63,982 bases of DNA from Zygnema circumcarinatum SAG 698-1b (taxonomy: Eukaryota > Plantae > Zygnematophyceae). Both the position numbers and the translations under genes were made by a program. Below, piece after piece: positions 45,601 through 62,110 of the stretch (positions are counted from its first letter, which is position 1; the number at the start of each line of letters is the position of its first letter). A model generated the notes under the pieces. The model searched no databases, was not told the DNA's origin, and was given only the letters and a program-made list of their open reading frames with translations. Location of the stretch: contig CM074812.1 of NCBI GenBank assembly GCA_037447605.1, positions 1,240,001 through 1,303,982 on the forward strand. The letters run 5' to 3'.

Positions 45601-48363
45601 GCCGAATCTGTTGCCCAATGCCAATTTCCGGAAAGATTCAGCTGACTATCAAATTTAGGTGCACGCTGCCAAGTGCTTCGGAATTACAATTACACTTAGG
45701 AATGCAAATGAAGTACCTTTTCATTCCTCTAGTTGAAACGTTCAGCCATTCCCCTGCATCCGCTCAGAAACCAAAGGGAATGATAAAGAAACAGAAAGGA
45801 ATTGAACAAGCACAGCCACGTTGCTATAGTTGTAAGTATGAATAGTTGGCACGATTTGATTCGTCTACAATGATACCGCTCCAAATACACAGTGGTTGCA
45901 GAGTCGTATATAATACTGAACTCTGTACAGGGAGCTCTTCACAGGTCCCTCTGCGAAACGGCAGGTTTAACCAGCTTTTGCAGATGCTCTCATCGTCGTT
46001 AATGTTTGAACATTTTTTTTCGCGGTTTTTTTTAACAAGAAGCTGAAACTAATAATGCCGTACAAGGTTCCAGAGTCAAGATTCGACATTTCGAAAAACA
46101 TTCGTCTTACCGATATCTTCAATGTTGGAAATAGTCGCAGATATTGCGAGAACACGAATATTTGAGATAGGGCAGCTCCTCATTTCTGGGTATCGTGATA
46201 GCATCTTCATTCTGCTAACTATGGCCTCCAATGCAGCCCCTCGAGGATCTCCAAGAAGATGAACCTCATCGATCAATAGAAGTGCGATGTCGCTGAAAAA
46301 ACCTACTCCACTGAATTCCCTTCGTTTCCTACTGAGCGAGTCAAATTTCTGCAGGCGAGAGTTCACAGTTAATCAACCAACCAATCATCTGACGATGGCA
46401 TTCCATAAAGTTGTGCATTTTTAGTGAGCAAGTCTGCAAGGAAACCTGACAGATGAATGAACCATCGTCTCGGTAATTTACTTGAATCTTTCACTGCATT
46501 TCCCCCGATTTATTCCTTAATGAATTCCTTAAATTAGTCATATCTCAGAACAGACAGGGGAAAAAACTTCCACCTATAATACTTTTGTTGAAACGGAATC
46601 TATAAAGCTGAAACCTACTGAACTATAACATTTATTCCTCGTCAGTGAGAAACTAGTCAGGCTTCAGTCCTTCATTCTAGCCCTTTCAGTAAAGTTGTTT
46701 CGTTTATAATCAGTAATTCCTCTCCAGGACCTCGGGGGTTGTTAGAATAATGTCCACGTCGTGCATATCCTTTTCGCTCGAAAATTCTGCATGCACAAAC
46801 AAGTTTCCGTGATAAACTGCATGAAGCTTTCATCTTATCCCGCTTTCCTTCCCTGTCTCTAAAGCAAATATGCAGATACTGCAATGCCATATTTAAAAAA
46901 AACTATAGTTCTTGAAACTATAAGACAGAGACTCAAAAAACCACAACAGACTACGTCCAAAAGCATCTCAGTCCATAGAAAAATTCCTATTCAGGACAGG
47001 GGCATTAAACTTGCTGACGTGAGATTTGCTGTGACAAGGCCTGATGATCACGCGTTTTCCTTAATGCGGCAAAAAGGTTACGTCAATTGATTTCCGCCTA
47101 ACTCGAACCAGAACCAGATTGTTGACAGCTTTCTAGTTTTTTTACATGACACTTCGTCATCATTTTGAACTTTGCCGCGGACAGATTTAAGTTGCTGAAA
47201 TCTAACCAGAGATTTTTTAGTTACTCTGATTGAAGAATAAGCAGAGATGGTACTAGCGGATTCGACAGGTGCTAAATATCGAATGGAACTTCAGAGGATT
47301 GTTGTACCTGAATCTCCCGTAAGCTCTTGACACTTGAGCTTCAACTGGTTAAACTTTTTCTGCCAGTCTCTTTGTTTTTCTTGGATCAATGCCTGTAGCA
47401 AGTCTTTTCAACAGATTAAGTAAACTGCGTGGAGATATAGAAAACATCAAACTCAGTGAGCACAAAACATGTGTTCCAAGATTATCAAAAGCGTTTTTTT
47501 ACATAGGCCTTGACCGAAAACGATGCTCTGGTGTTTGAAGTTTTTGATAAGACCTTCATTGGTGCGACATAAACCTGCAAAGAGGGAATGACAAAGAGTC
47601 AAAAAAGTTATTATAAGGATACATAAATTCCAAGTTCGTTCAATTCTAGTGGCACGACCAAAATTATAATCCAGCATTGACAAAGAAAAGTCTATTCGAA
47701 TGTTTCCAGAAGCTGAGTGAATAAGAAAACCTACAATTTTGAAGGAGCCACCTGTGTGAGCCAATTCTCCTGTAGGTGTCAAGCTTTTGCTCAAAAGTCG
47801 GAGAATGGCAAGTTCAAATAATACAGTTTTTCCGCTCCCTGTGATGGAAATGCGGTTTTGCACACAACGTTAAGAGAAAAATCTTGTCCGTTTAACTGTG
47901 GAGATCTGCAACCTGTTGCCGATTATACTACAGTAGGTGACCAGAAAATACCAGTTGGCGCAGATACAAGAAGATTCTGATCTGAGAGGAAAACCTCGTT
48001 GAAGGTCTCACTTTGCACCGCATTGAAGTACCTGCATCCAAATCTTGCATGTCCGTTTCTGACAGTTGCAGCACAACTTGCAAGGCAGAGATGGTCATAC
48101 ATTGCCTGCTTCTCCATCAGTCGAACCCTTGCCCAAGTATCCCATTCATCAAGCTCAAAAAGAGCTAACCTGAATTCAAATACACCCTGGAAGCATTTTG
48201 GAAGGGATGAAACCGATTTCAACGTATCCTCCTCCGGCCAATCCATGGACTCTGCCCAGGCCTCCTCATCACCTACGCGCATTCTACCTCCAAAACCTGT
48301 TCCTGCGTTTTCCTGGCGTTGCCGAGGTGTCCATAGACGCTGAGGCTGGCTGAGATCCGCCAT
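36626..48363 (-). CDS. MER3: Meiotic DExH-box helicase MER3/HFM1 (RCK, DExH17), about 35 exons
   Basis: Exons include 48363-48170, 48031-47952, 47838-47735, 47574-47554, 47392-47308, 46786-46731, 46348-46111, 45753-45717, 45607-45561, 45374-45337, 45176-45155, 44986-44892, 44635-44518, 44276-44120, 43945-43894, 43757-43686, 43483-43434, 43261-43181, 42942-42906, 42804-42741, 42572-42489, 42176-42051, 41943-41750, 41471-41283, 41045-40794, 40525-40476, 40290-40273, 39925-39840, 39640-39503, 38395-36910, 36749-36626. Exons between 38400 and 39500 and the start codon are uncertain. Motifs: SAPTGSGKT, IDEVH, ISAT, VFCSTRKGAQEAA, FHNGGL, TTNTLALGVNLPAH, QMAGRAGRPQFD, Sec63 region LWDDSPYQLKQLAGIG, C-terminal SIFSFL*. 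Confidence 0.95.
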
Positions 48364-48697
48364 ATCCGAGACGCTCCTGGGAGCTTTTCCTGCCTTCAGG
48401 CAACCATCGCAGACCTTGCAACCATTTGCACCGCCTTGCAGTCCGTAGCCACCGCAGTCTTGCCTCCGTTGGCAAATACTATGTATACCACGCTTCGCGC
48501 ACAGCCATATCCATGTAAATTTATATCTCACCCGTTCCAGTTCCAGTCGCAGTAATATTTTCTGAATTTTAAAGCGTGATTTTTGATTCGAAATCTTTGT
48601 GAACGCTGCTCTGTTCCACAGCAACTGAGAGCGTTGGTTCCATGCAGCCCCCCCTTCCTCTCCCCGGCTCTCTTCCGCTCAGTGCGAGCTCGCGGCC

Positions 48698-51756: not shown

Positions 51757-53400
51757 TCACGTCGTGCGGTTGTGCTTGAGATAGCGAAGGGCGAGAAAGG
51801 CGAGGAGCCGGAAGAGCACAGAGTAGAGCGCTAACGCCATCATGTCAAGGGCCACCCGCGAATGGTCCAGACTGCGGCTGCCTTGAATCTGACTCCATAT
51901 GAACACATTGCTGCAAGGCGGAACAGCAAGAAATGCAACATAATAAGCAAAAGGAGAGGCAGACATTTCTTGAACTGCTGAACCCTAAAAAGGGAAATGG
52001 TGGCCTGTTTTAGGGCGGAACAGCAAGAGGAGCAACAATAATAAGAAAAGGAGAGGCAGAAGTTTCTTGAACTGCTGAACCCTAAAAAGGGGAATGGTGG
52101 CCTGCTTTTAGCTTGCAGTTGGGCGAACTCTCCTCACTTTGAAAGGCGCGGGCAGTCGCAAGCAGGGCATGCTGCCGGCAGCAGTTGGCAGGCAGGAACG
52201 CGTCCGCCATCGATGCACTGAATGGAGAAAACAAAAACAGACAAGGTATGGTCAACACCTCACAACTGCCAGGATCTGAAACCCATCTCCTTTCAACGTC
52301 ATTAAAAAGGGTTTTTAGGGTTAGTTTTCTGCGATCACTCTCTCCCTCTCTCCGCATCTTCACATGAGGAGAGGGCTGCATTCACCTGCGGCTTATTCAC
52401 ATCGCAGAAGAAGGTGGTCGATGTCATGGCGTTCAGGGCGTATTGCAGAGGGTTTATCCAAAACAGCCACAAGTAATAGGCAGGGGTCCGCAGTCGGACC
52501 AGCACAAGGCCCCCTGTTGGCACCATGATGCTGATCACCATGGGGACGAGCACGGAGGCGAGCTGCACCCCCCCCATGCATGCATGCATGCATGCCTCCG
52601 CATGGGGTTAAAAAGTTGAAGACACCTTTGAAAGTGAGGAGGACATTGACGGATAGCAGTCAGCAGGCAGCACGAGTTAGCAGGCTGAGCGCTAAGGGCG
52701 ATTGCGAGGAATGAAGTATTTAATATTATTATTATTATTTATTTTTGAAGTTTTAATTGTGAGTAGGGGTTTGCTTTTGTGGTTCTGCGATTCTTACAGG
52801 AGGGAACGGAGCGGCGACGGCGAGGAGGAGAGCGAAGAACGTGACAGCGAGCACGAACTCGAAAAAGATGAACCACACTTTGAAGAAGATAGCGGCAGAT
52901 TGCGTGGCGAGTCCCGACATTCCGAAGGAGATGGAGCAGAAAATCAACGTTATCATCACCAAGTATGGAATCTGAAACCCTCACAGACCCCATTTCAGGA
53001 CTAGGAAATTGGAAAAACCAAGCAGTCTGTGACAATCTCAGTTGATTTTTAGCTGATTAGTTTGCATCTTTCTCACCTCAGCCAGACCCCACGAGAGGTT
53101 GTAAAAGATTGCATGATACTGCTTTTGCGAAAGCTCTCTCCGATATGCAGCAGCTGCTCCCAGAACTTGCGGAATCACTCCTCCCGCATTGGCCACAGCA
53201 AAAAGAAGGCAAGAAATGAACATCTGTCCCGCTCTCGCATTCATTCCGGGGATAGAAGTCACGTTTTCCTGCCAAAAAATGGACCCCACAAGCAGCCCCA
53301 ACAGAATGGCTGACATAAAGCGCCCAAAACTGTAGTGAAGGTTGCGCCAATACTGCTTCTGAAGCCTGCAAATGGCAACGGAGAAAAGCAACCCCCCGTC

Positions 53401-53432
<32 letters not shown>

Positions 53433-53905
53433 ACCCACAACCCCAAACCTAAACACTAAAAAGCAGTCGAGATTTCATTTGCGAGTGATAAAGTTGTGGA
53501 ATTAACCCTCACCTTAAGATGACCATTTTGGCCTGCAACAAGCTGCCGGCGGCGTATCCGCGAGCCGTGAGCTGTGGGCCCACCCCCCCGCCCTTGTTGT
53601 GGCGCAGAGCCTCCAGTGTGCCCGCATTGCGAATGGCCAATCGGCTCACGCGGTACTCGAAGGCGTAGTCTCTGCGCATGACTCGTCTCTCGCTGACGCC
53701 ATCGCCGATGATGTCGAACACATAGCTCATGGGACTCATGTTGGCATCGCAGGGAGGGGTCCCTGAAATTCCCTCAAAGTAGCTCTGCAGGGGAAAGAGG
53801 AGGAAGGAAATTTCTCTGCTCAGTTCGAGCAAGCTCAAGTTTCACGAAGGCTTGAGCATTCCTTTCCAGATCTCTCTCTCTCTCGCTCTCTCTCTCTCTC
53901 GCGCG

Positions 53906-53936
<31 letters not shown>

Positions 53937-54130
53937 CCCCTCCCTCCCTCTCGCCCTCTTTCCCTCCCTCCCTTTCTCCCTCTCTCCCTCTCGCCCTCTT
54001 TCCCTCCCTCCCTCCCTCTCTCCCTCTCTCCCTCTCTCCCTCTCGTCCTCTCTCCCTCTCTCCCTCTCTCCCTCTCCTCTCTCTCTCTTCCCCTCTTTCT
54101 CTCTCTCTCTGTCTCTCTCTCTGTCTCTCT

Positions 54131-54181
<51 letters not shown>

Positions 54182-57100
54182 AGTGTGGACCCCCCTGCCA
54201 CAAACCTTGATAGCCGCACATTTCTCGCCGATGGGTCCAAAGTAAACGCATTCTCCGCCTGCTTTAAGAATGAGAGCGGAGTCAAAGTGGGCGACTAAGC
54301 GCAGGCTGGGCAGGTGCAGACTGGCAGCAATGGTCACTCCGCCTCCAGCGATGTTCTGCAATGCATGATGGCAGAACTATGTCAAATTGAGAGCAAGAAG
54401 CCAACTTTCTTGCTCAATTTTGACCAAAACACAACTTGCAAGAAGCTTTTTGAGCAGAATCTCGCATTTGGGCTATCAGTACACAATTGGGTCTTTCCTA
54501 CCTTCAAGCATTTGACAACATGGAGAGCTGCCTGACTGTCTATACCAGCTGTCGGCTGCTCCAATAGGAGGACACTGGGATTTGCTGCCATCTCTATGGC
54601 AATCATCACTCGCTTCGCATCTCCCTGACCGAGAGTGCTCTTCAGGGAAACCACGAGCCGCTTTTCCATGTGCGACAGTTCCGTAACTTCGAGTATCTGC
54701 AGAACAGCAGCATACGAACGCTTAGTCAGAGGCCTGAAAATTCGAAAATTTTCAATTAGTTGTGATTAAAAAAAGGAAAGAAAGGGGAAGGGGAGGGGGA
54801 TAAGGGTCTCACATAGTCAACGAAGGCTCGCCGATCTTCGGCGGTCACTGTTGATCCGATCCGCATTGCGGCGCTAAATTCAAGAGCTTCTCTCACAGTT
54901 GTGAAGGGCCAATATGCATCTTGGCGGTCCACAAACCCTACAATTCGAGCAAATGTGGCCCTCTTCCTCGGATATCCGTTCACTAAAACTTGCCCAGAAA
55001 CCTCTTCCGGATTCACATACCGCTCTGCAAGCAAAGTACAATTGTAAATGCGTCAATCTCTATGTAAGTTTTTGACTCTCAGATAAGGGGTAGGCTTCCT
55101 TAAAGTCTTGAGTGTGAGCAATTCAACTTAGTGTGATATTCCTTTTGGCAAATTGTTGGAGTGAGAGAGAAGTGAGAGAGAGAGAGAGGCATCTTCCCTC
55201 ACCTGCTAGAATGTCTAACAGAGTCGATTTTTCTGCGGTGGAAATTCCAAGAAGGGCGAGCATCTCTCCAGGACGAACCCAACCGCTGACATCATGGATT
55301 ACACTTTTCTTTTGTTGGATTTGCGGAATAAAAATACTATAGCTGAGGTCATACCAGCTCAGCGTAACTGGCACAAGGGGAATACTGCTGCGGAATCCCG
55401 CCGCTTTCTCTGCCGCATATTCCTCATCTTCTGCCCTAAAAATTGCTGACTCATCGCGATCAGCAAGCTGCGAAAAACCGGCTCAGCACATATTAGAAAG
55501 ATGCAGGTGAACATAGAAAATTTATTCAAGCATGCTTTTTTGGTTTAGGGCATTGCTGGGTGCATCCTAATGGGTGGCAGTGCATTTCTCACTTCTTTCG
55601 CAGGCAAAGCTCCCTCTTCTGTGGGAGGAATATGTCGAATTTTTGCAATGCAGAGGTAGGCCAAAAAATTCCACAAAACAATCCATCCAATGATCACCCC
55701 CGCTCCAACTCCTATCCAACCTCGGTCGACCAAAAACTGTCCCGAAGCGAGGTAGGCTCGGCCGAGGGTCTGCTCAATGCGACCTCTGCACTGCAGTCCA
55801 TGGCCGCTCTCCCTCCCTCCCTTCTCTCACATCAGAAGCAAACTCCAATTTCTCACAAGTTCCCCAAAAGGATATCGCAAACAAGCACTGGAAATTCAGT
55901 TTTGAGTCTCAAAAACTTAAGAAACTTCACTTATCCTTTAAACTTTAGGGAAACGTAAAAAAAACTTAAAAAAAAAAACTTTAAACTTCAACTTAAAAAA
56001 AACTTGAAAATAACTTGAAAACAAAAAAAAAAAAACTTAAACTTTAGGGAACTTTAGGGAACTTTAGGCTTCTTGGGTTCTCATTCATCACTTGACAGGT
56101 GAGGGGGGAGGGAGGGAGGGGAGAGAGAAGGAGTGAGAGAGAGAGTGGGAGAGAGAGAGAGAGAGAGGGGTATGGTTGACCTGCGGAAAGAGCGCCAAAT
56201 TGGCTTCTGCACAAGAGCGAGTCCAAGTTTTGGAAGAAAACTCGTTGATGAGAATGTCAGTGATGGCCCATTGTAAAGGGTTTATGTAGTAGAACCAAAT
56301 CCAGTACTTGGGGATCTTGAACCGCGAAACGACAAAACCCGCGAAAAGGACGAAAAGAGCGATGAACACTCCTGCAAACCCGGAAATTCTGCATTTGTTT
56401 TAGTTGAAAAAAAAAGGTAGGGTTCGTGGATTGGATTTTAGGGTTGCTGCTCATGGCAAAGCTGCTGCAGAACTGCAGAAAAAAATAAAAAAATTTACCA
56501 GAAATGGCGTTGGCTACGCCAATATCGGGAGCGAAAAAAGCCACAAATCGCACCATGGCGGCTCCCTGGACATTAGAAAGAGGGCTCAGCTCTGAAATTA
56601 TTTCGAAAGTGAGAGAATGAAAAGCCCATTTTCCTACCTTTTTTATTTTTTGTTTCATCCTCTTCTTCTGCCCATCCCTCCATTCCTCTCTCACCTTTGA
56701 GAATTCTTCATTCTCTGTTTCATTCCTAAGGGATTTCTCCTTTCTTGACAGGAAATGACAGAGGGAAGGTGGCGATTCTCACATGCAGTTGAACCAAAAG
56801 CACGAGCACATAGAACACCCAGAAGTGTAATCCGCCGCTGTCTGTGCTCAAACCGGAGAGGAAGTAAACTAAGGTGCTCCAAATGGTGGCCTGCACAACA
56901 CACCCAATTTTCATGAAACTTCGTCAAACTAAAAGTTGACCTTCAGGACTTCTTTCTTTCAAACCTTAAAGTATAACTCACTTCAGAGTTTTAAAATTTA
57001 AGCTTTCGAGTCGGCTTGGAGTTCAATTTGGCCCCACATTCTACAAAAATCCCAAAATTGAAGGCTTCTTTCGTTAAAGCGGGGGCCAATGGCCGGCAAC

Positions 57101-60100
57101 CATTGGCAATGGTTGGTACGGACCTCTGCGAGCGAATACAAGGCTCCACCGGCAAAAAGGCCGAACCAATAGGAAAATGGACGGAAAAATCTTCCAGCTT
57201 CCTGCTTGTAGAAGACATTTCTCTCTTCAAAAAGGGCCGGATATTGACCCAAATTGACCAGCGTGTTGACCATAAGCGAGTAGAACCCCACTCCGCGACG
57301 CAAGTTAGCATCAAGCTGGTTGACGTCATCACTCATTTGGAAAAAAAGGCTGCCTGCATACAGGCTCAGCAGAACAATCTGTGCCCCAATTGACAAAAAA
57401 AGAAGAAACAAAAAAAAAAAAAATCCTTAATTCACCGGTTACACATGCTCTACACCCCTCAGAGAGTCGTTCAGACGAAGTGAAAAGACGAGATTTTCAG
57501 ACTTTTTGCTTCTTTTGGTGATCCGAATTCAAAGATTTTTTTAGTAATTCTTTCCTTTCTGAGCCTTTGGGTACTTTCAAAAGTTGTGCAGAATGCAGAG
57601 GAGAGCCTTTGAGAGGACAAACCTGGAAGGTGCGCGCGTAGAGACTGAACTTATTCCGCCATTGAAGCGCCACGTGTCGACACGTGAGTCGCCACATTTC
57701 ATACCATACACTTCGGAGGTACTCGTTCTCATATTGCGCCGCAGCAATAGTTTCCGGCTGCCACCACCTCTCAAATTTCCACCAATTAGACCATTGTTCA
57801 CAATGCATCCCTCCTGCATTTGGAAAATAAACCCCAAGTCCCCTAGTGGGGGAGAGAGAGAAAGAGAGAGAGAGAGCGAGAGAAAGAAAGAGGGAGAGAG
57901 ATAAAAGGGAGAGAGAGAAAGAGAGGGAGAGAGAGAAAGAGAGAGAGAGGGAAAGAGAGAGAGAGAGAAGTAGGAAGAGAGTGTTTTTTTTAGGTGCAAG
58001 TTGTGAGTGAACTACCTCTTTGTATGGCCGAGTTGTTAGTAGCGTTATGGGCCCCTTTGCTTCATCCAGAAGCTTCTGCACCTTCTCCGCCGGCTCTCCC
58101 ACGACATCCTCCACGAGGGAATCCATGGCTGCCACCCCTGTAATGGCATCCCCTTCCTCAATTGGGGCTGTCTTAGTGAGAGAAACTTCACGGAGAGTGC
58201 TCGCAGGGCCGAGAGATGCAACGGATGGTCCAGGCCCCACTTCAATATCGAAGGGGGGCATTACCTGCAGGTGTCCATTTGTCCAAGAAAAAAAAAAAAA
58301 ACCCAATAAGCTTCCATGATATAAACTTTTGCTAGATAGCGCTTCTTAGACAGAAGAAGTCCTTTTCCTTCAAAATTTCTTGAACTTCAAAAATGCTGTT
58401 GACAGCAGTGCAGAAGCTTCCAAAGGCAATTCTTTAGAAATCTGCCCCAAACGAACTGAAAAGTTGACGCACCCTCGCCGACACCTCCCTCGTAATTTGC
58501 GGCGAATTCACAATGCGTAAAATCTGTGCATGGAGCGGCGACTTTTCGAAGGCCTCCGCGAAGCCGTCCGCGTCGAGATGCGCGCACCCCTCTTTGAGGT
58601 ACGCGCACCCCTCTTGTGTCGTCACCTCCTGCAGGAACTCCGCCGTCTCCACGTTGGCGGGCTTCACGTACCTGTTCTCGCACACACATATATTGAATTA
58701 AAGTACAACTTTTTAAGTCTCTGAAGGAGAGAGGGTGATAGAGAGAGAGGGGACGGGGAGAGGGAGAGAGGGTGAGAGAGGCGGGGGAAGAGAGAGAGAG
58801 AGACGAGGGGGAAGACGGTTAGAGAGTGAGAGAGGGAGGGGGAAGAGAGAGAGGGGAAGAGGGTGAGAGAGTGAGAGAGGGATGGGGAAGAGAGAGAGAG
58901 AGGAGGGGGAGGAGGGTGAGAGAGTGAGGGAGTGAGAGAGGGAGGGGGACGAGAGAGAGAGGGGAGGGGAAGAAGGAGAGAGAGTGAGAGTGGAGGGGGG
59001 AGAGAGAGAGAGACGAGGTGGAACTGGGTGAGAGAGTGAGAAAGGGAGGGGGAAGAGGAAGAGCGAGGAGGGGGAAGATGGGGGGAGAGTGAGAGAGGGA
59101 GGGTTCGGGGTATTCGCTTTCCGCAGTCTTAACCGGTCGGAAAGGGAGAAAGAAGGGGGTCTTGACTCACCCGAGGCTTTCAAAGTATGGGAGAGCATCG
59201 GATATGGGCCCTTGAAAAGCAACTCGCCCGCGGGAGAGGAGGATGAGCCTGTCGAAAAGTTGAAATACTTCGGGATTGGGCTGCTGGAGGGAGATCAGGC
59301 AGGCAGTTCCTCGAACCCGCGAAAATATGAGAGTAGCAAGAACCATCTCATACGTCACTTTCGGATCGATTCCGCCTGCACTACACCAATTACCGGTATG
59401 CTTTTTCACTGTTTTTTCATTCTGCATTCATCCAATTCTTGACTGCAGCATTGTATATTGTTAAAAAAGACCATAAAGCCCCCCTTTTAGAAGCCGATCT
59501 TACCTGCATTCAGCTCATCAAAGAAGTAAGCTGGATATGTCCCTGATAGAATCTCTGCCACGCTTAATCTGTGCCGTTCATCCGCTGTAGTTGTCGGAAT
59601 CGTAGGGCTTCCTGCAGGACGGTTAAGTATCCTTTTAAGACCTGTCATGCTGGTGGTAAGCTCAAGCTTGGGATCTAAACCCATTTGCAGAGCCTCCCGC
59701 ATAATATCCTGCATTCATCCATTCAAAAAATCGCCAACTAACATGTCAATAACCACATTGCAGTCATAAAACCCATCTGATTTTCTTTAAGTAAAAAATT
59801 GCAGATTACTTTAGTGACTTACTTTAAGCTCAGGGCCGTAATTCTTCCATGTCCAGAACTGAGTAAAGTCTCTTGCGAACTCCATGGTCTCCTTCACAGA
59901 GAGGAGAGGGAGATGGAAGTCGCTAGAGTCCACCACTCCCACGAGTCTCTGCACCTTCACCTCCGCTGCTGTTCTCCCATTGTAAGTCACTCTCCCACTA
60001 AACTCAATTCCCTTTCCGAGATTGGCTCGCCCTGCAAGCACTTTATGGAGAGTGCTTTTTCCGCAGCCCGGGGGACCTGCACTCCATCATGAAAAAACTG

Positions 60101-62110
60101 CACAGTGAATATTGGGTTGTTGAGGCTTTAATGGTTTGTAGAGTTGTCATATTTTTAGAGAAGATGCAGTAGAAAAGCAGAGAAGATTTTTTTTTTTTTT
60201 TTTTTTTATTCCGGTGGTCTATTTCGCTCTCACCAAGGACAAGAGTGAAGCTGCCGGGCATGATGTGGCCCGTCACTCCACGTAGCACCGCCACGTCAGC
60301 AATTTGCGGCTTCTTCTTGAGGGGGCCCGACACAATGCCCTTTGCCTGCGCCCCAAGAAACAAACTAAGCAAACAAATAATGAACGAAAAATAACAAAAT
60401 TACTAAATTGATTGAATGAATGAATGAGTGTTTCGCAGCAGCATACCTTCGTTCCCAAAGTTTCAAAGCCTTCCGGAACAGTGCGCTTCAGCTTGTACGA
60501 AATGTCTTTGAAACAAATCACCTGCCAGAAAACCACTGCCATCAATTGGAGTGCTTTGAAGCTCACTCAAGTCAGGTCAAGTCAAGTCAAGTCAAGACAT
60601 TTCCAGTCTACTAAACTCAGCTAGCTCAACTCGATTCGACTCGACCTTTAACTCACATTAGCTCACTCTTTCCACAAACAAAACTTTTCTGAAGAGAAAC
60701 TCGATCGACTGATTCGAATTGGGTTTTTTCTTTTTGCCTGCGTAGCCTCACCTGATTCTTGGAATTGGGCAAGTAGGGGTTGATGCGAAGCAGAAACTGA
60801 AGCAGCCCATCTTTCAGGAGCAGCTCTATTCCATGGAGCTCCTTCTCCGGGCCCACTCTCCTCCCATCACTTTGCATAACTGCTGCCAAGGAAGCTGCAA
60901 TACTTTTCGCCTTCTCCTCCTCTCCAGCAGCCACTAAAGATTGGTGATATTCCATAATGAGGTGGATAAGCCAAGCTTGAGGGGCCTGCAGGAGAGCCTC
61001 AAAGTAGTCTCTCTCATCTGCTGTAGAAGCTTCTGGAAGCTTCCCTGCAAGCAGCAAAGGAAGGTCCCTTGGCATTGAACCTTTCTCGGCTTCAAGATGG
61101 GCTGAAGATTTCGCAGTTTCTGAAGGAGAGGCGAGGAGGGGAGCGGTCTCGGAGAGAGAGGGAGCGGGAGAGCCATGGCTGCCGCTGAGACTGCTGCTTC
61201 GGCGAAGGCTAAGGGCCCTGTAAAGGGAGGAGGAGGGCAGAAACCGTATTGATTAACATTAAACGAAAGTAATGCTTACATTTTATCAATATTGGCGTTA
61301 ATGTTGACAAATGTATTGTTATTGGTGGTAGCATTAGTGTCATAATACTAGCGTTAGTGATAGTAGAACCAAAAGTAGTTCCATTATTATCATAAGTGTT
61401 GTAGGCCCTAATAAAGTGTTTAGATATGTTCCAATGCGAGACCATGCTGCATTGTGCGCACACCCCACCTCTCTCGCCACGCGGGCAGACCGCCCTCCAA
61501 GAAGGAGGCGACGGCATCGCCTGCACAGCCACCGCGGGATGGTCAGTGGGACGCGGGGGAGGAGGGAGAGAGAGGGGGCAGAGGGAGAGAGAAGGGGCAG
61601 AGGGAGAGGGAGGGGGCAGAGGGAGAGGGAGGGGGCAGAGGGAGAGGGAGGGGGCAGAGGGAGAGGGAGGGGGCAGAGGGAGAGGGAGGGGGCAGAGGGA
61701 GGAGGAAGCAAAGGCAGAGAGGGGCCAGAAATGGGTGGTGAGTGGGTGAGGGGGGGTGGAATGGCGGAAAAGGATAGATAGTATACGAGAGGGGAGGAAC
61801 TGAAGGGAGGAACTGAAGGGAGTGAACTTGGGAGTTACAATGGAAGCGAGAGGGATAAAATAACAAGGAACTAAGAATATCAATGTGTGTGCTTGTGAGA
61901 GAGAGAGGAGAGAGAGCGAGAGGGAGAGGGAGGGAGAGTGAGAAAGACAGAGAGTGAGAGAGAAAGGGAGAGCGAGAGCAAGAGAAAGAGCGAGAGAGAT
62001 AGAGGGAGAGAGAGAGAGAGATAGAGGGAGAGAGAGGGGGAGAGAGTGAAAGAGGAGGGCAAACCTTCGTCCTTCGCCATGGCGCCCCCTCCGCCCTCTC
62101 CTCCCGCCAT
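51757..62110 (-). CDS. Full-size ABCG/PDR-type transporter (NBD-TMD-NBD-TMD, about 1590 aa, 26 exons) with degenerate ATPase motifs
   Basis: Exons (minus): 62110-62065, 61520-61469, 61217-60752, 60521-60447, 60345-60234, 60076-59823, 59708-59504, 59375-59171, 58671-58485, 58264-58016, 57757-57623 (acceptor uncertain), 57378-57124, 56890-56783, 56565-56499, 56371-56181, 55790-55593, 55467-55203, 55024-54813, 54696-54502, 54355-54206, 53784-53513, 53365-53077, 52971-52798, 52562-52386, 52217-52138, 51910-51757. PDR hallmarks: LRGVTGHIMPGSFTLVLGPPGCGKST, ERNVFYKQ, IPKYWIWFYYINPLQWA..NEF, LSWYDLSYSI, DVSGWVRPG, YFGPIG, YWRN, LAEIPY, WINPLQY. Confidence 0.9.
51915..52111. repeat. Tandem duplication of about 97 bp in the last ABCG intron
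   Basis: 51915-52013 and 52014-52111 are near-identical. Only one copy is followed (minus strand) by the CAG acceptor. Confidence 0.9.
53860..54180. repeat. CT/GA-rich simple-sequence tract in an ABCG intron (others at about 57850-57980, 58730-59100, 61900-62050, 19880-20090)
   Basis: Directly visible polypurine/polypyrimidine runs; they generate the spurious RE/SL ORFs. Confidence 0.95.
61565..61705 (+). repeat. About 7 copies of a 19-bp G-rich unit (GGGGCAGAGGGAGAGGGAG) in ABCG intron 1
   Basis: Directly visible tandem array. Confidence 0.9.

What the first reader, a model, noticed from the sequence alone, without database searches (positions are those of the whole stretch)
54206..60076. 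Full-size ABCG/PDR protein with both ATPase sites apparently inactivated
Seen, against plant PDR consensus. NBD1: Walker A GPPGCGKST and Walker B FFDE are intact, but the Q-loop is VDSSD (Q to S), the signature is TTADE instead of ISGGQ (about 59580-59600), and the H-loop is SLQQP. NBD2: Walker A is GISTAEKST (both Gly lost; about 55225-55255), the Q-loop is VDRQD (Q to R), the signature is LGQGD instead of LSTEQ, and Walker B is LLLEQ instead of FMDE (54556-54570), the classic hydrolysis-dead E-to-Q change. Known: each site combines one NBD's Walker A/B with the other NBD's signature, and in PDRs the NBD2 site is the canonical catalytic one. Here that site is hit in Walker A, Walker B, Q-loop and partner signature. 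Yet all 26 reconstructed exons keep frame and both TMDs look conserved. Inference: a pseudo-ATPase ABCG kept by selection, perhaps a nucleotide-gated channel or facilitator, sensor or scaffold (analogous to SUR/CFTR), rather than a pump.
Basis: partly seen in the sequence, partly recalled or inferred. Interest (0 to 1): 0.82.

Follow-up and report, generated by a model that had tools for sequence, protein, structure and literature searches.

The report
Pump-like ABCG protein, ATP sites disabled
This green alga expresses a protein built like a drug-efflux pump whose normal ATP-splitting site is wrecked and whose other site can probably only hold ATP; it belongs to an old branch of similar proteins shared by algae and land plants, so it probably does something other than ordinary pumping.

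Summary

The gene is larger than reported. It lies on the minus strand at 51757-61075, with 24 GT-AG exons encoding 1514 aa.

- **Site 2 (the catalytic site in PDR-type ABCGs):** every element is hit except the H-loop His. NBD2 Walker A is GISTAEKST, NBD2 Walker B is LLLEQ, the NBD2 Q-loop has R, and the NBD1 signature is TTADE.
- **Site 1:** Walker A and Walker B are intact. It lacks the Q-loop Gln, the H-loop His and a usable partner signature.

This is a lineage trait. The protein sits in a well-supported clade with Spirogloea, Mesotaenium, Marchantia MpABCG27, Riccia, Selaginella, Diphasiastrum, ferns and Tasmannia. All members lack the NBD1 SGG signature, and different members lost different other catalytic residues. 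The sister proteins (Chlorokybus, Chara, Closterium, Riccia) are canonical.

One exon (58016-58264) encodes a PDZ-fold insert shared with that sister group.

The scan had already reported the same traits in a paralog 877 kb away in this genome.

The parts
51757..61075 (-). Whole coding region of the full-size ABCG gene: 24 exons, 23 GT-AG introns of 101-499 nt, 4545 nt CDS, 1514 aa. Domain order is N-terminal region, NBD1, PDZ-like insert, TMD1, NBD2, TMD2.
   Evidence: Model built. Thirteen junctions are listed directly in transcript contigs. Two more come from loose ends (54206 to 53784; 60076 to 60234). One comes from contig length bookkeeping (55790/56181). The other seven rest on collinear homology to P0001 and the total length (1146 of 1176 nt in the contig).
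59171..60345 (-). NBD1 (exons 3-6). Walker A is GPPGCGKST (60234/60076-60051). Q-loop is VDSSD (59919-59933). Signature position is TTADE (59577-59591). Walker B is YFFDE (59514-59528). H-loop position is SLQQP (59278-59292).
   Evidence: Pfam ABC_tran on the Walker A exon. Motif columns against 40 relatives. Coordinates.
58016..58264 (-). A single exon (aa 459-541) encoding a PDZ-fold domain inserted between NBD1 and TMD1.
   Evidence: The exon is present in transcripts. AlphaFold2 on a 16-sequence alignment gave pLDDT 86 and pTM 0.75. The Foldseek top 50 are all PDZ domains. VIA-align gave Z up to 10.2, rmsd 1.6-2.1 A over 70-73 of 83 residues, with 313 chains at Z>=8. The Pfam PDZ hit is only 13.2 bits, E 0.12.
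55593..57757 (-). TMD1 (exons 9-14).
   Evidence: Pfam ABC2_membrane, hydropathy peaks, 43-52% identity to clade relatives.
54206..55467 (-). NBD2 (exons 15-18). Walker A is GISTAEKST (55222-55248). Q-loop is VDRQD (54918-54932). Signature is LGQGD (54619-54633). Walker B is LLLEQ (54556-54570). H-loop is SLHLPS with His kept (54305-54322).
   Evidence: Pfam ABC_tran on two exons. Alignments to Pdr5/Cdr1 chains. All four exons appear in spliced contigs with 0 differing letters.
51757..53784 (-). Linker and TMD2 (exons 19-24), including a Cys-rich extracellular loop exon (52138-52217) and the stop codon at 51757-51759.
   Evidence: Pfam ABC2_membrane on two pieces. tblastn collinearity with P0001 to its last residue. 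Junction enumeration.
60447..61075 (-). N-terminal exons 1-2 (aa 1-133), a helical region conserved within the clade. The start ATG is at 61075.
   Evidence: tblastn to P0001 residues 77-191, alignment with nine relatives, no Pfam family. The junctions here rest on homology only.

Best explanation
The locus is an expressed, intact gene for a full-size (NBD-TMD)x2 ABCG protein. It belongs to an old streptophyte clade that has given up the family's only canonical ATP-hydrolysis site.

In PDR-type ABCGs, site 1 (NBD1 Walker A/B plus the NBD2 signature) is already deviant, and site 2 (NBD2 Walker A/B/Q/H plus the NBD1 signature) does the catalysis.

- **Site 2 here probably cannot close on ATP, or even bind it.** Two Walker A glycines are replaced by Thr and Glu. 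Walker B is E-Q instead of D-E. The Q-loop Gln is Arg. The partner signature is T-A-D-E instead of S-G-G-E.
- **Site 1 most likely still binds ATP.** It keeps a complete P-loop and Walker B. It lacks the Q-loop Gln, the H-loop His and a usable signature. It would hold ATP as a structural or regulatory ligand, like the deviant site of Pdr5, with little or no turnover.

I therefore infer that the protein is not an ordinary hydrolysis-driven pump. Its conserved membrane domains, Cys-rich outer loops and cytosolic PDZ-fold module would serve a function that needs ATP binding at most. That could be a regulator, sensor or passive conduit, possibly working with partner proteins.

Shown: gene structure, expression, motif states, clade membership, PDZ fold. 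Inferred: loss of hydrolysis, ATP binding at site 1, and the non-pump role.
For: - **Expression and intactness.** Spliced contigs in four runs from two studies carry 0 differing letters. The model has 24 in-frame exons, all GT-AG.
- **Motif identities.** Alignments to Pdr5/Cdr1 fix which residue is which. The window's Thr and Glu sit at Pdr5 G908 and G910, and G908S inactivates Pdr5 (PMC8421411).
- **Which site is catalytic.** The same paper states that site 2 is the hydrolytic site and site 1 is non-catalytic in Pdr5.
- **Clade-wide decay.** All 14 clade members compared lack the NBD1 SGG and a canonical NBD2 signature. Different members lost different further residues:
  - NBD2 Walker B is DE, DG, NE, RE, DN, EE, ED, DD or EQ.
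  - NBD1 Walker B Glu becomes Q, N, H or S in all the land-plant members and in Mesotaenium_1.
- **Canonical sister.** The four sister-group proteins aligned with the clade (P0004, P0006, P0007, P0019) are fully canonical.
- **Clade support.** The clade is monophyletic, SH-aLRT 100.
- **Relaxed constraint on NBD2.** NBD2 identity is 46-48% between alga and liverwort in this clade, against 68-72% in the canonical sister. The TMDs are about equally conserved in both.
- **NBD1 P-loop is held.** The NBD1 Walker A glycines are invariant in the 9-sequence clade alignment, and no NBD2 Walker A position is.
Against: - No biochemical data exist for any member.
- In the window protein and three other algal lineages (Spirogloea, P0015, Mesotaenium_2), NBD1 keeps Walker B Asp-Glu. 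All but P0015 (GAPGCGKAT) also keep a complete Walker A. Site 1 could therefore hydrolyse slowly.
- His-less and Gln-less ABC sites can retain partial activity (my knowledge of Pdr5 H-loop mutants).
- Some clade members (Spirogloea, liverworts, Diphasiastrum) keep NBD2 Walker A and B, so loss of binding at site 2 is not universal.
- No close ortholog was available, so codon-level selection on this particular gene could not be measured (one search was uninformative).
Confidence: 0.6

Rival explanations
1. Site-swapped pump. The protein is still an ATP-driven exporter, but uses site 1 (NBD1 Walker A/B) as its working site, with site 2 reduced to a structural contact. This is the mirror image of fungal PDRs.
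For: NBD1 Walker A GPPGCGKST and Walker B YFFDE are intact in the window protein. Walker B Asp-Glu is also kept in Spirogloea, P0015 and Mesotaenium_2, and a full Walker A in Spirogloea and Mesotaenium_2. The NBD1 P-loop glycines are invariant in the clade. The membrane domains are conserved like those of transporters.
Against: - Site 1 lacks the Q-loop Gln (Ser here).
- It lacks the H-loop His, which is absent in the whole family.
- It faces LGQGD in place of a signature.
- The land-plant members replace the NBD1 catalytic Glu by Q, N or H, so the function the clade conserves does not need hydrolysis there.
- In Pdr5, converting the deviant site into an active one abolished function (PMC8421411). 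That argues the two sites are not interchangeable.
Confidence: 0.25
2. Pseudo-enzyme partner. The protein has no activity of its own. It regulates or scaffolds a catalytically active ABCG paralog or another membrane protein, with the PDZ-fold module providing the contact.
For: - Canonical sister genes coexist with degenerate ones in Riccia (P0006 and P0021).
- Zygnematophytes hold both kinds: canonical in Closterium, degenerate in Spirogloea and Mesotaenium.
- A PDZ-fold domain is present.
- The same genome holds a second degenerate copy (scan notes).
Against: - The PDZ insert is older than the degeneration and is also present in the canonical relatives, so it is not specific to the dead-site proteins.
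- In the window protein, the Gly of the PDZ carboxylate-binding loop is Asp.
- Full-size ABCGs are not known to need a partner (my knowledge).
- No interaction data exist.
Confidence: 0.1
3. Decaying paralog. The gene is on its way to becoming a pseudogene, and the motif losses are neutral damage.
For: There are many simultaneous losses of catalytic residues. A second similar copy exists in the genome.
Against: - The 4545-nt frame is open across 24 exons with 23 canonical splice sites.
- Full-length spliced transcripts appear in two studies.
- The terminal branch (0.43-0.53) is no longer than those of its relatives.
- Orthologous proteins are 42-51% identical over their full length from algae to ferns.
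Confidence: 0.03

Closest known systems
Fungal PDR transporters Pdr5 / Cdr1 (solved structures 7P03, 9IUK, 9S2C)
   Same: They share the (NBD-TMD)x2 ABCG architecture and are the best solved-structure matches for the NBD2 exons. They are built asymmetrically, with one deviant, ATP-holding, non-catalytic site (PMC8421411).
   Different: In Pdr5 the deviant site is site 1 only, and site 2 is fully canonical and drives transport. Here site 2 is the more damaged one, and site 1 also lacks Gln, His and a signature. Pdr5 has no PDZ insert.
Canonical sister proteins of the same green-lineage branch: Chlorokybus P0007, Chara P0025, Closterium P0004, Riccia P0006, Cymbomonas P0019. This is probably the 'V1-Type' full-size ABCGs of Cho et al. 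2020 (PMC8359288).
   Same: They are the nearest canonical relatives in the tree. They share the domain order. Four of the five (not Chara P0025) have the PDZ-like insert. They share the ERHR motif after the NBD1 signature.
   Different: They keep GVSGGE, GSSGAGKTT, LFLDEPTSG and CTIHQPS. Their NBD2 is 68-72% identical among themselves, against 46-48% between alga and liverwort in the degenerate clade.
Uncharacterised clade members: Marchantia MpABCG27 (P0120), Riccia P0021, Selaginella P0029/P0070, Diphasiastrum P0121, Adiantum P0123, Pteridium P0125, Tasmannia P0026, Spirogloea P0001, Mesotaenium P0124/P0009
   Same: They fall in the same clade (SH-aLRT 100). All lack the NBD1 SGG and a canonical NBD2 signature. 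All have the PDZ-like insert except Mesotaenium_1.
   Different: Each lineage lost a different further set of catalytic residues. The window protein is the only one with E-Q at NBD2 Walker B, and it keeps the NBD2 His. None has a published function that I could find.
CFTR and SUR1/2 (ABCC family)
   Same: These are ABC-fold proteins used for something other than pumping (a gated channel; a channel regulator), with one deviant ATP site. This is a functional analogy for what a non-pumping ABC protein can do (my knowledge).
   Different: They belong to a different subfamily and fold type (type IV exporter against the type V ABCG). They retain one hydrolytic site. The analogy is only 'works like', not membership.
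Paralog in the same genome, about 877 kb before this window (scan notes s1-337026, s1-337037)
   Same: It was reported as a PDR-type ABCG, transcribed, with both ATP sites degenerate and a PDZ-like insert between NBD1 and TMD1.
   Different: It is a different locus, and I could not read its DNA. Its relation to this gene (recent duplicate or old paralog, as with the two Mesotaenium genes) is unknown.

Membership tests
Full-size ABCG (PDR-type) ABC proteins | Reverse domain order NBD-TMD-NBD-TMD in one polypeptide | tested here: met
   Pfam ABC_tran and ABC2_membrane hits alternate along the minus strand. The gene is collinear with 1400-1700 aa relatives. The model is 1514 aa.
Full-size ABCG (PDR-type) ABC proteins | Deviant site 1: no His in the NBD1 H-loop and a non-SGGQ signature in NBD2 | tested here: met
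   The window has SLQQP and LGQGD. Canonical relatives have SLLQP and LSVEQ.
Full-size ABCG (PDR-type) ABC proteins | Canonical catalytic site 2: NBD2 GxxGxGK[ST], hhhhDE, Q-loop Gln and H-loop His, plus NBD1 xSGGx | tested here: not met
   The window has GISTAEKST, LLLEQ, VDRQD and TTADE; only the His is kept. It is therefore a structural member of the family but not a catalytic one.
'V1-Type' early-diverged Viridiplantae full-size ABCGs (Cho et al. 2020, PMC8359288) | Found in charophytes, bryophytes, lycophytes and a basal angiosperm, and absent from other angiosperms | tested here: inconclusive
   The relatives found have that kind of distribution: Chara, Chlorokybus, Closterium, Spirogloea, Mesotaenium, liverworts, Selaginella, Diphasiastrum, ferns and Tasmannia. 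The paper's sequence list is not held, so identity of the two groups is inferred.
Classical land-plant PDRs (AtABCG29-43 type) | Pfam ABC_trans_N and PDR_assoc domains; nearest relatives are classical PDRs | tested here: not met
   There is no Pfam family on the N-terminal exon or on relatives' N-termini. PDR_assoc scores only 16.6 bits against a cut-off of 24.9. The exhaustive search with the TMD2 exon gave only 111 hits. The 29 I looked up, all from the better-scoring half, are algal, early land-plant, Tasmannia or protist proteins, or unnamed, with no classical PDR among them; the other hits were not looked up.
PDZ domain | PDZ fold (about 80-90 residues, beta-sandwich with one long helix) | tested here: met
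   The AF2 model has pLDDT 86. All top structural matches are PDZ domains, with Z up to 10.2 and rmsd 1.6-2.1 A over 70-73 residues.
PDZ domain | Sequence match to the Pfam PDZ model above its gathering score; h-G-h carboxylate-binding loop | tested here: not met
   The Pfam PDZ score is 13.2 bits against 23.2. Relatives have P-L-G-V-x-F, but the window has P-F-D-I-E-V. Peptide binding cannot be tested here.
ABCC-type regulatory or channel ABC proteins (CFTR, SUR) | ABCC sequence family with TMD-NBD order | tested here: not met
   The best solved-structure matches are ABCG/PDR chains, and the domain order is NBD first. The resemblance is functional analogy only.

The most novel reading that the evidence does not exclude
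Streptophytes, from zygnematophyte algae to ferns and at least one early-branching angiosperm, keep a family of PDZ-bearing, full-size ABCG 'pseudo-transporters' in which neither nucleotide site hydrolyses ATP. These proteins would use the ABCG membrane fold for a job that needs at most ATP binding: sensing, regulating a partner, or passive conduction. That would be the first exporter-fold ABC family that is non-catalytic at both sites by long-term design. This alga carries at least two copies.
Probability: 0.4. Interest if true: 0.8.

Novelty: new variant of a known kind. Interest (0 to 1): 0.62.

Why it matters
ABC exporters are defined by ATP hydrolysis. Known exceptions (CFTR, SUR, the deviant sites of Pdr5, TAP and ABCG5/G8) still keep one working site.

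A clade that has lost the consensus site in every member, keeps eroding the other, and yet stays conserved and expressed over the algae-to-land-plant transition asks a direct question: what can the ABCG fold do without its engine?

The question is testable, because the clade includes Marchantia MpABCG27 in a tractable model plant.

It also flags automatic annotations as probably misleading. Examples are 'pleiotropic drug resistance protein 1' and 'ABCG31' on the Selaginella members and 'pleiotropic drug resistance protein 1-like' on Tasmannia.

The PDZ-fold insert is a clean marker of this little-studied green-lineage ABCG branch.

Tried and rejected
1. **dN/dS between the two nearest relatives.** I fetched the CDS for P0015 and P0114. 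There were only 3 synonymous and 4 non-synonymous differences, which is uninformative.
2. **Finding the window's own protein in the databases.** It appeared in neither search, so whole-protein tools such as full-length Pfam or structure prediction could not be applied to it. The spliced protein has no reference.
3. **PDB search with the NBD1 signature exon.** There was no hit even at E 10. That motif is placed through the family alignment only.
4. **Cross-checking membership in Cho et al.'s V1-Type.** The supplements are not held.
5. **Pfam on the conserved N-terminal region.** It matched no family.
6. **Gene-model artefact** (canonical motifs hidden in other exons). Rejected: transcript contigs join exactly the exons that carry the deviant motifs.
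7. **Odd joints.** These are 58596 to 59297, 59017 to 59898, and 58306 to 56018 through A-runs. They have 20-27 nt anchors next to GA or A-rich repeats, so I treated them as assembly artefacts.
8. **The second structure job was not used.** Models come without coordinates, so site geometry could not be inspected.

Full report
**Gene structure**

Stop-to-stop translation of the minus strand shows ABC_tran and ABC2_membrane pieces (Pfam).

An exhaustive HMMER search with the TMD2 exon (53077-53361) returned only 111 proteins. The best was P0001 from Spirogloea muscicola at 46% identity. tblastn of P0001 against the window is collinear from 61009 to 51760.

I built a model from that alignment, GT-AG enumeration and the transcript data:
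- 24 exons and 23 GT-AG introns of 101-499 nt
- ATG at 61075 and stop at 51757
- a 4545-nt CDS encoding 1514 aa

The domain order is N-terminal region, NBD1, insert, TMD1, NBD2, TMD2.

**Expression**

Five public runs of the same organism hold 40-55% of the sampled words of the 8.8-kb stretch. That is about the exonic share.

I laid four of the runs on 54150-60140. Contigs skip 13 introns exactly, all CT..AC on the plus strand, which is GT..AG for the gene. One 4820-nt contig spans the whole mRNA.

- Loose ends give two more junctions (54206 to 53784; 60076 to 60234).
- Contig length bookkeeping fixes 55790/56181.
- The same bookkeeping fits the 3' part, with 1146 of 1176 nt accounted for.
- No differing letters were reported.

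The runs are labelled only as guessed RNA, but intron-less contigs can hardly be anything else. Two studies are involved.

So the deviant motifs are in the mature message. The seven remaining junctions (two at the 5' end, five at the 3' end) rest on homology.

**Motifs**

Alignment to solved Pdr5/Cdr1 chains is gap-free across the NBD2 Walker A. GISTAEKST lines up with GASGAGKTT at residues 905-913. The window therefore has Thr at Pdr5 G908 and Glu at G910. The Pdr5 structure paper lists G908S as inactivating (PMC8421411).

The Gly before the Walker Lys contacts the phosphates with its backbone and tolerates no side chain. This is general P-loop knowledge, not tested here.

LLLEQ lines up with FLDEP, so Asp becomes Glu and the catalytic Glu becomes Gln.

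In the family alignment:
- the NBD2 Q-loop Gln is Arg
- the NBD1 signature GVSGGE is TTTADE
- the NBD1 Q-loop Gln is Ser
- the NBD2 signature GLSVEQ is TLGQGD

The NBD1 Walker A (GPPGCGKST) and Walker B (YFFDE) are intact, and the NBD2 H-loop His is kept.

Canonical relatives have SLLQP, so NBD1 lacks the His throughout this kind of protein.

**It is a clade trait**

A multiple alignment of 40 full-length hits and two trees (LG+G4, SH-aLRT) place the window protein in a clade with support 100. The second tree holds 17 members of that clade.

- **Algal subclade.** The window pairs with an unnamed transcriptome protein, P0015 (support 95). Also here are two Mesotaenium genes and three Spirogloea homeologs.
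- **Land-plant subclade, sister to the algal one.** Riccia, Marchantia MpABCG27, Diphasiastrum, Adiantum, Pteridium, a fern-like Logan cluster and a metagenome cluster.
- **Second branch.** Two Selaginella genes and Tasmannia lanceolata.

The sister proteins have fully canonical motifs. These come from Chlorokybus, Chara, Closterium, a second Riccia gene and, further out, the prasinophyte Cymbomonas.

Earlier notes of this scan call the genome a streptophyte alga. The tree position among zygnematophyte sequences agrees.

**Pattern of decay**

- All 14 clade members compared lack the NBD1 SGG and a canonical NBD2 signature.
- All but Marchantia lack the NBD2 Q-loop Gln.
- By the G-x4-G-K-[ST] rule, NBD2 Walker A is intact in 8 of 14.
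- NBD2 Walker B reads DE, DG, NE, RE, DN, EE, ED, DD or EQ.
- NBD1 Walker B Glu is kept in four algal lineages only. It is Q, N or H in all the land-plant members.
- NBD1 Walker A is complete in 10 of 14. Its glycines are invariant in the 9-sequence alignment, where no NBD2 Walker A position is invariant.

Different lineages losing different catalytic residues is what one expects if hydrolysis became dispensable in the clade ancestor. The stable NBD1 P-loop suggests that nucleotide binding there still matters.

**Conservation by domain**

| Comparison | NBD2 identity | TMD identity |
|---|---|---|
| Degenerate clade, alga vs liverwort | 46-48% | 39-45% |
| Canonical sister group | 68-72% | 40-64% |

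The extra constraint that normally makes the catalytic NBD the best-kept part is gone. The protein as a whole stays 42-51% identical between algae, liverworts and ferns.

The window's terminal branch (0.43-0.53) is among the shorter ones in the algal group.

This, the open 24-exon frame and the transcripts argue strongly against a pseudogene. A direct dN/dS test was not possible; the only close pair available differs at 7 codons.

**PDZ-fold insert**

Exon 8 (58016-58264, aa 459-541) lies between NBD1 and TMD1, and I noticed that it has a PDZ-like sequence pattern.

- The Pfam PDZ hit is weak, at 13.2 bits and E 0.12.
- AlphaFold2 on a 16-sequence alignment gives pLDDT 86 and pTM 0.75.
- The 50 best Foldseek matches are all PDZ domains, with TM 0.45-0.68.
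- VIA-align gives Z up to 10.2 at rmsd 1.6-2.1 A over 70-73 of 83 residues, with 313 chains at Z>=8.

The insert of about 90-120 aa is present in the degenerate clade and in its canonical relatives, including Cymbomonas. It is absent from 28 other full-size ABCGs, which have at most 28 residues there. It is missing in Mesotaenium_1 and in the Chara model.

The insert therefore predates the loss of the ATP sites and marks this whole green-lineage branch. In the window protein, the Gly of the presumed carboxylate-binding loop is Asp.

An earlier scan note on the paralog (s1-337037) reports the same insert but says land-plant relatives lack it. That holds for classical PDRs perhaps, but not for the land-plant members of this clade.

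**Reading**

In Pdr5, site 2 is the hydrolytic site, and site 1 holds ATP without splitting it (PMC8421411).

The canonical sisters of this clade have the same asymmetry in milder form: no NBD1 His and LSVEQ in NBD2.

The clade then lost site 2. In the window protein the losses at site 2 are severe enough that even binding is doubtful.

Site 1 looks able to bind ATP-Mg through its P-loop and Walker B Asp. But it has no Gln, no His and no signature to complete a catalytic pocket.

My best reading (0.6) is an ATP-binding protein that does not work as an ordinary hydrolysis-driven pump. The rivals are:
- a site-swapped pump using site 1 (0.25)
- an inactive partner of another protein (0.1)
- a decaying copy (0.03)

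**Known or new**

Cho et al. 2020 (PMC8359288) describe a 'V1-Type' group of early-diverged full-size ABCGs. They find it in Chara, Klebsormidium, mosses, Selaginella and Amborella, and nowhere else in angiosperms.

The distribution found here matches that description. The paper never mentions Walker motifs (0 occurrences), and its sequence lists are not held.

Full-text searches found no description of the dead sites or the PDZ insert. They covered MpABCG27, degenerate or non-catalytic plant ABCGs, PDZ with ABCG, and V1-Type. MpABCG27 occurs once, in an unrelated paper.

Within this scan, the same two traits were already reported for a paralog 877 kb upstream in the same genome. I could not read that DNA.

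What this report adds:
- a second locus with the same traits
- the transcript-verified gene model
- the extent of the clade into land plants
- the canonical sister group
- the lineage-specific pattern of loss

**Limits**

- All functional statements are inferred from sequence.
- The whole spliced protein could not be handed to the structure or family tools.
- Classical land-plant PDRs were not in the trees.
- The root of the clade relative to the canonical group is not resolved beyond SH-aLRT support.

Noticed in passing
window 58016-58264 (-): One exon encodes a complete PDZ-fold module. Exon and domain boundaries coincide, which would fit insertion by exon shuffling. In this copy the loop that binds peptide C-termini in PDZ domains has Asp where relatives have Gly.
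   Followed up: yes
window 53871-54179, 57852-57968, 58727-59103, 61562-61701, 61897-62059: There are long GA/TC-type microsatellites and G/A-rich minisatellites inside introns and upstream of the gene, for example (TCTC)n with 77 copies in intron 18. They caused skipped stretches and probably false joints in the read layout.
   Followed up: partly
window 51917-52111: A 97-bp unit is repeated twice (90% match) in the last intron, overlapping the acceptor of the final exon by a few bases.
   Followed up: no
window 46079-48678 (-): The downstream neighbour on the same strand has a DEAD/DEAH-box helicase exon (Pfam DEAD, E 3e-7) and P-loop-like and DEVH-like pieces. It is probably a Ski2/Brr2-like helicase gene.
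   Followed up: partly
window 52138-52217 (-): Exon 23 encodes a Cys-rich stretch (C..C..CPxCxCPRL) in the last extracellular loop. It is conserved across the clade and suggests disulfide-stabilised outer loops, as in other ABCGs.
   Followed up: no
window 58596-59297 and 59017-59898: Two extra joints were seen in two or three runs with short anchors (20-27 nt). One has GT..AG on the plus strand. It could be an antisense splice or, more likely, a repeat-driven assembly artefact.
   Followed up: no
L001 and L002 (Logan ERR12684110 and ERR12684111): The closest relative of the window protein (P0015/P0114, about 47% identical) comes from two transcriptome runs of an unnamed organism. Its NBD2 Walker A has His-Lys in place of Gly-Lys, and its Walker B Glu is Gly.
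   Followed up: partly
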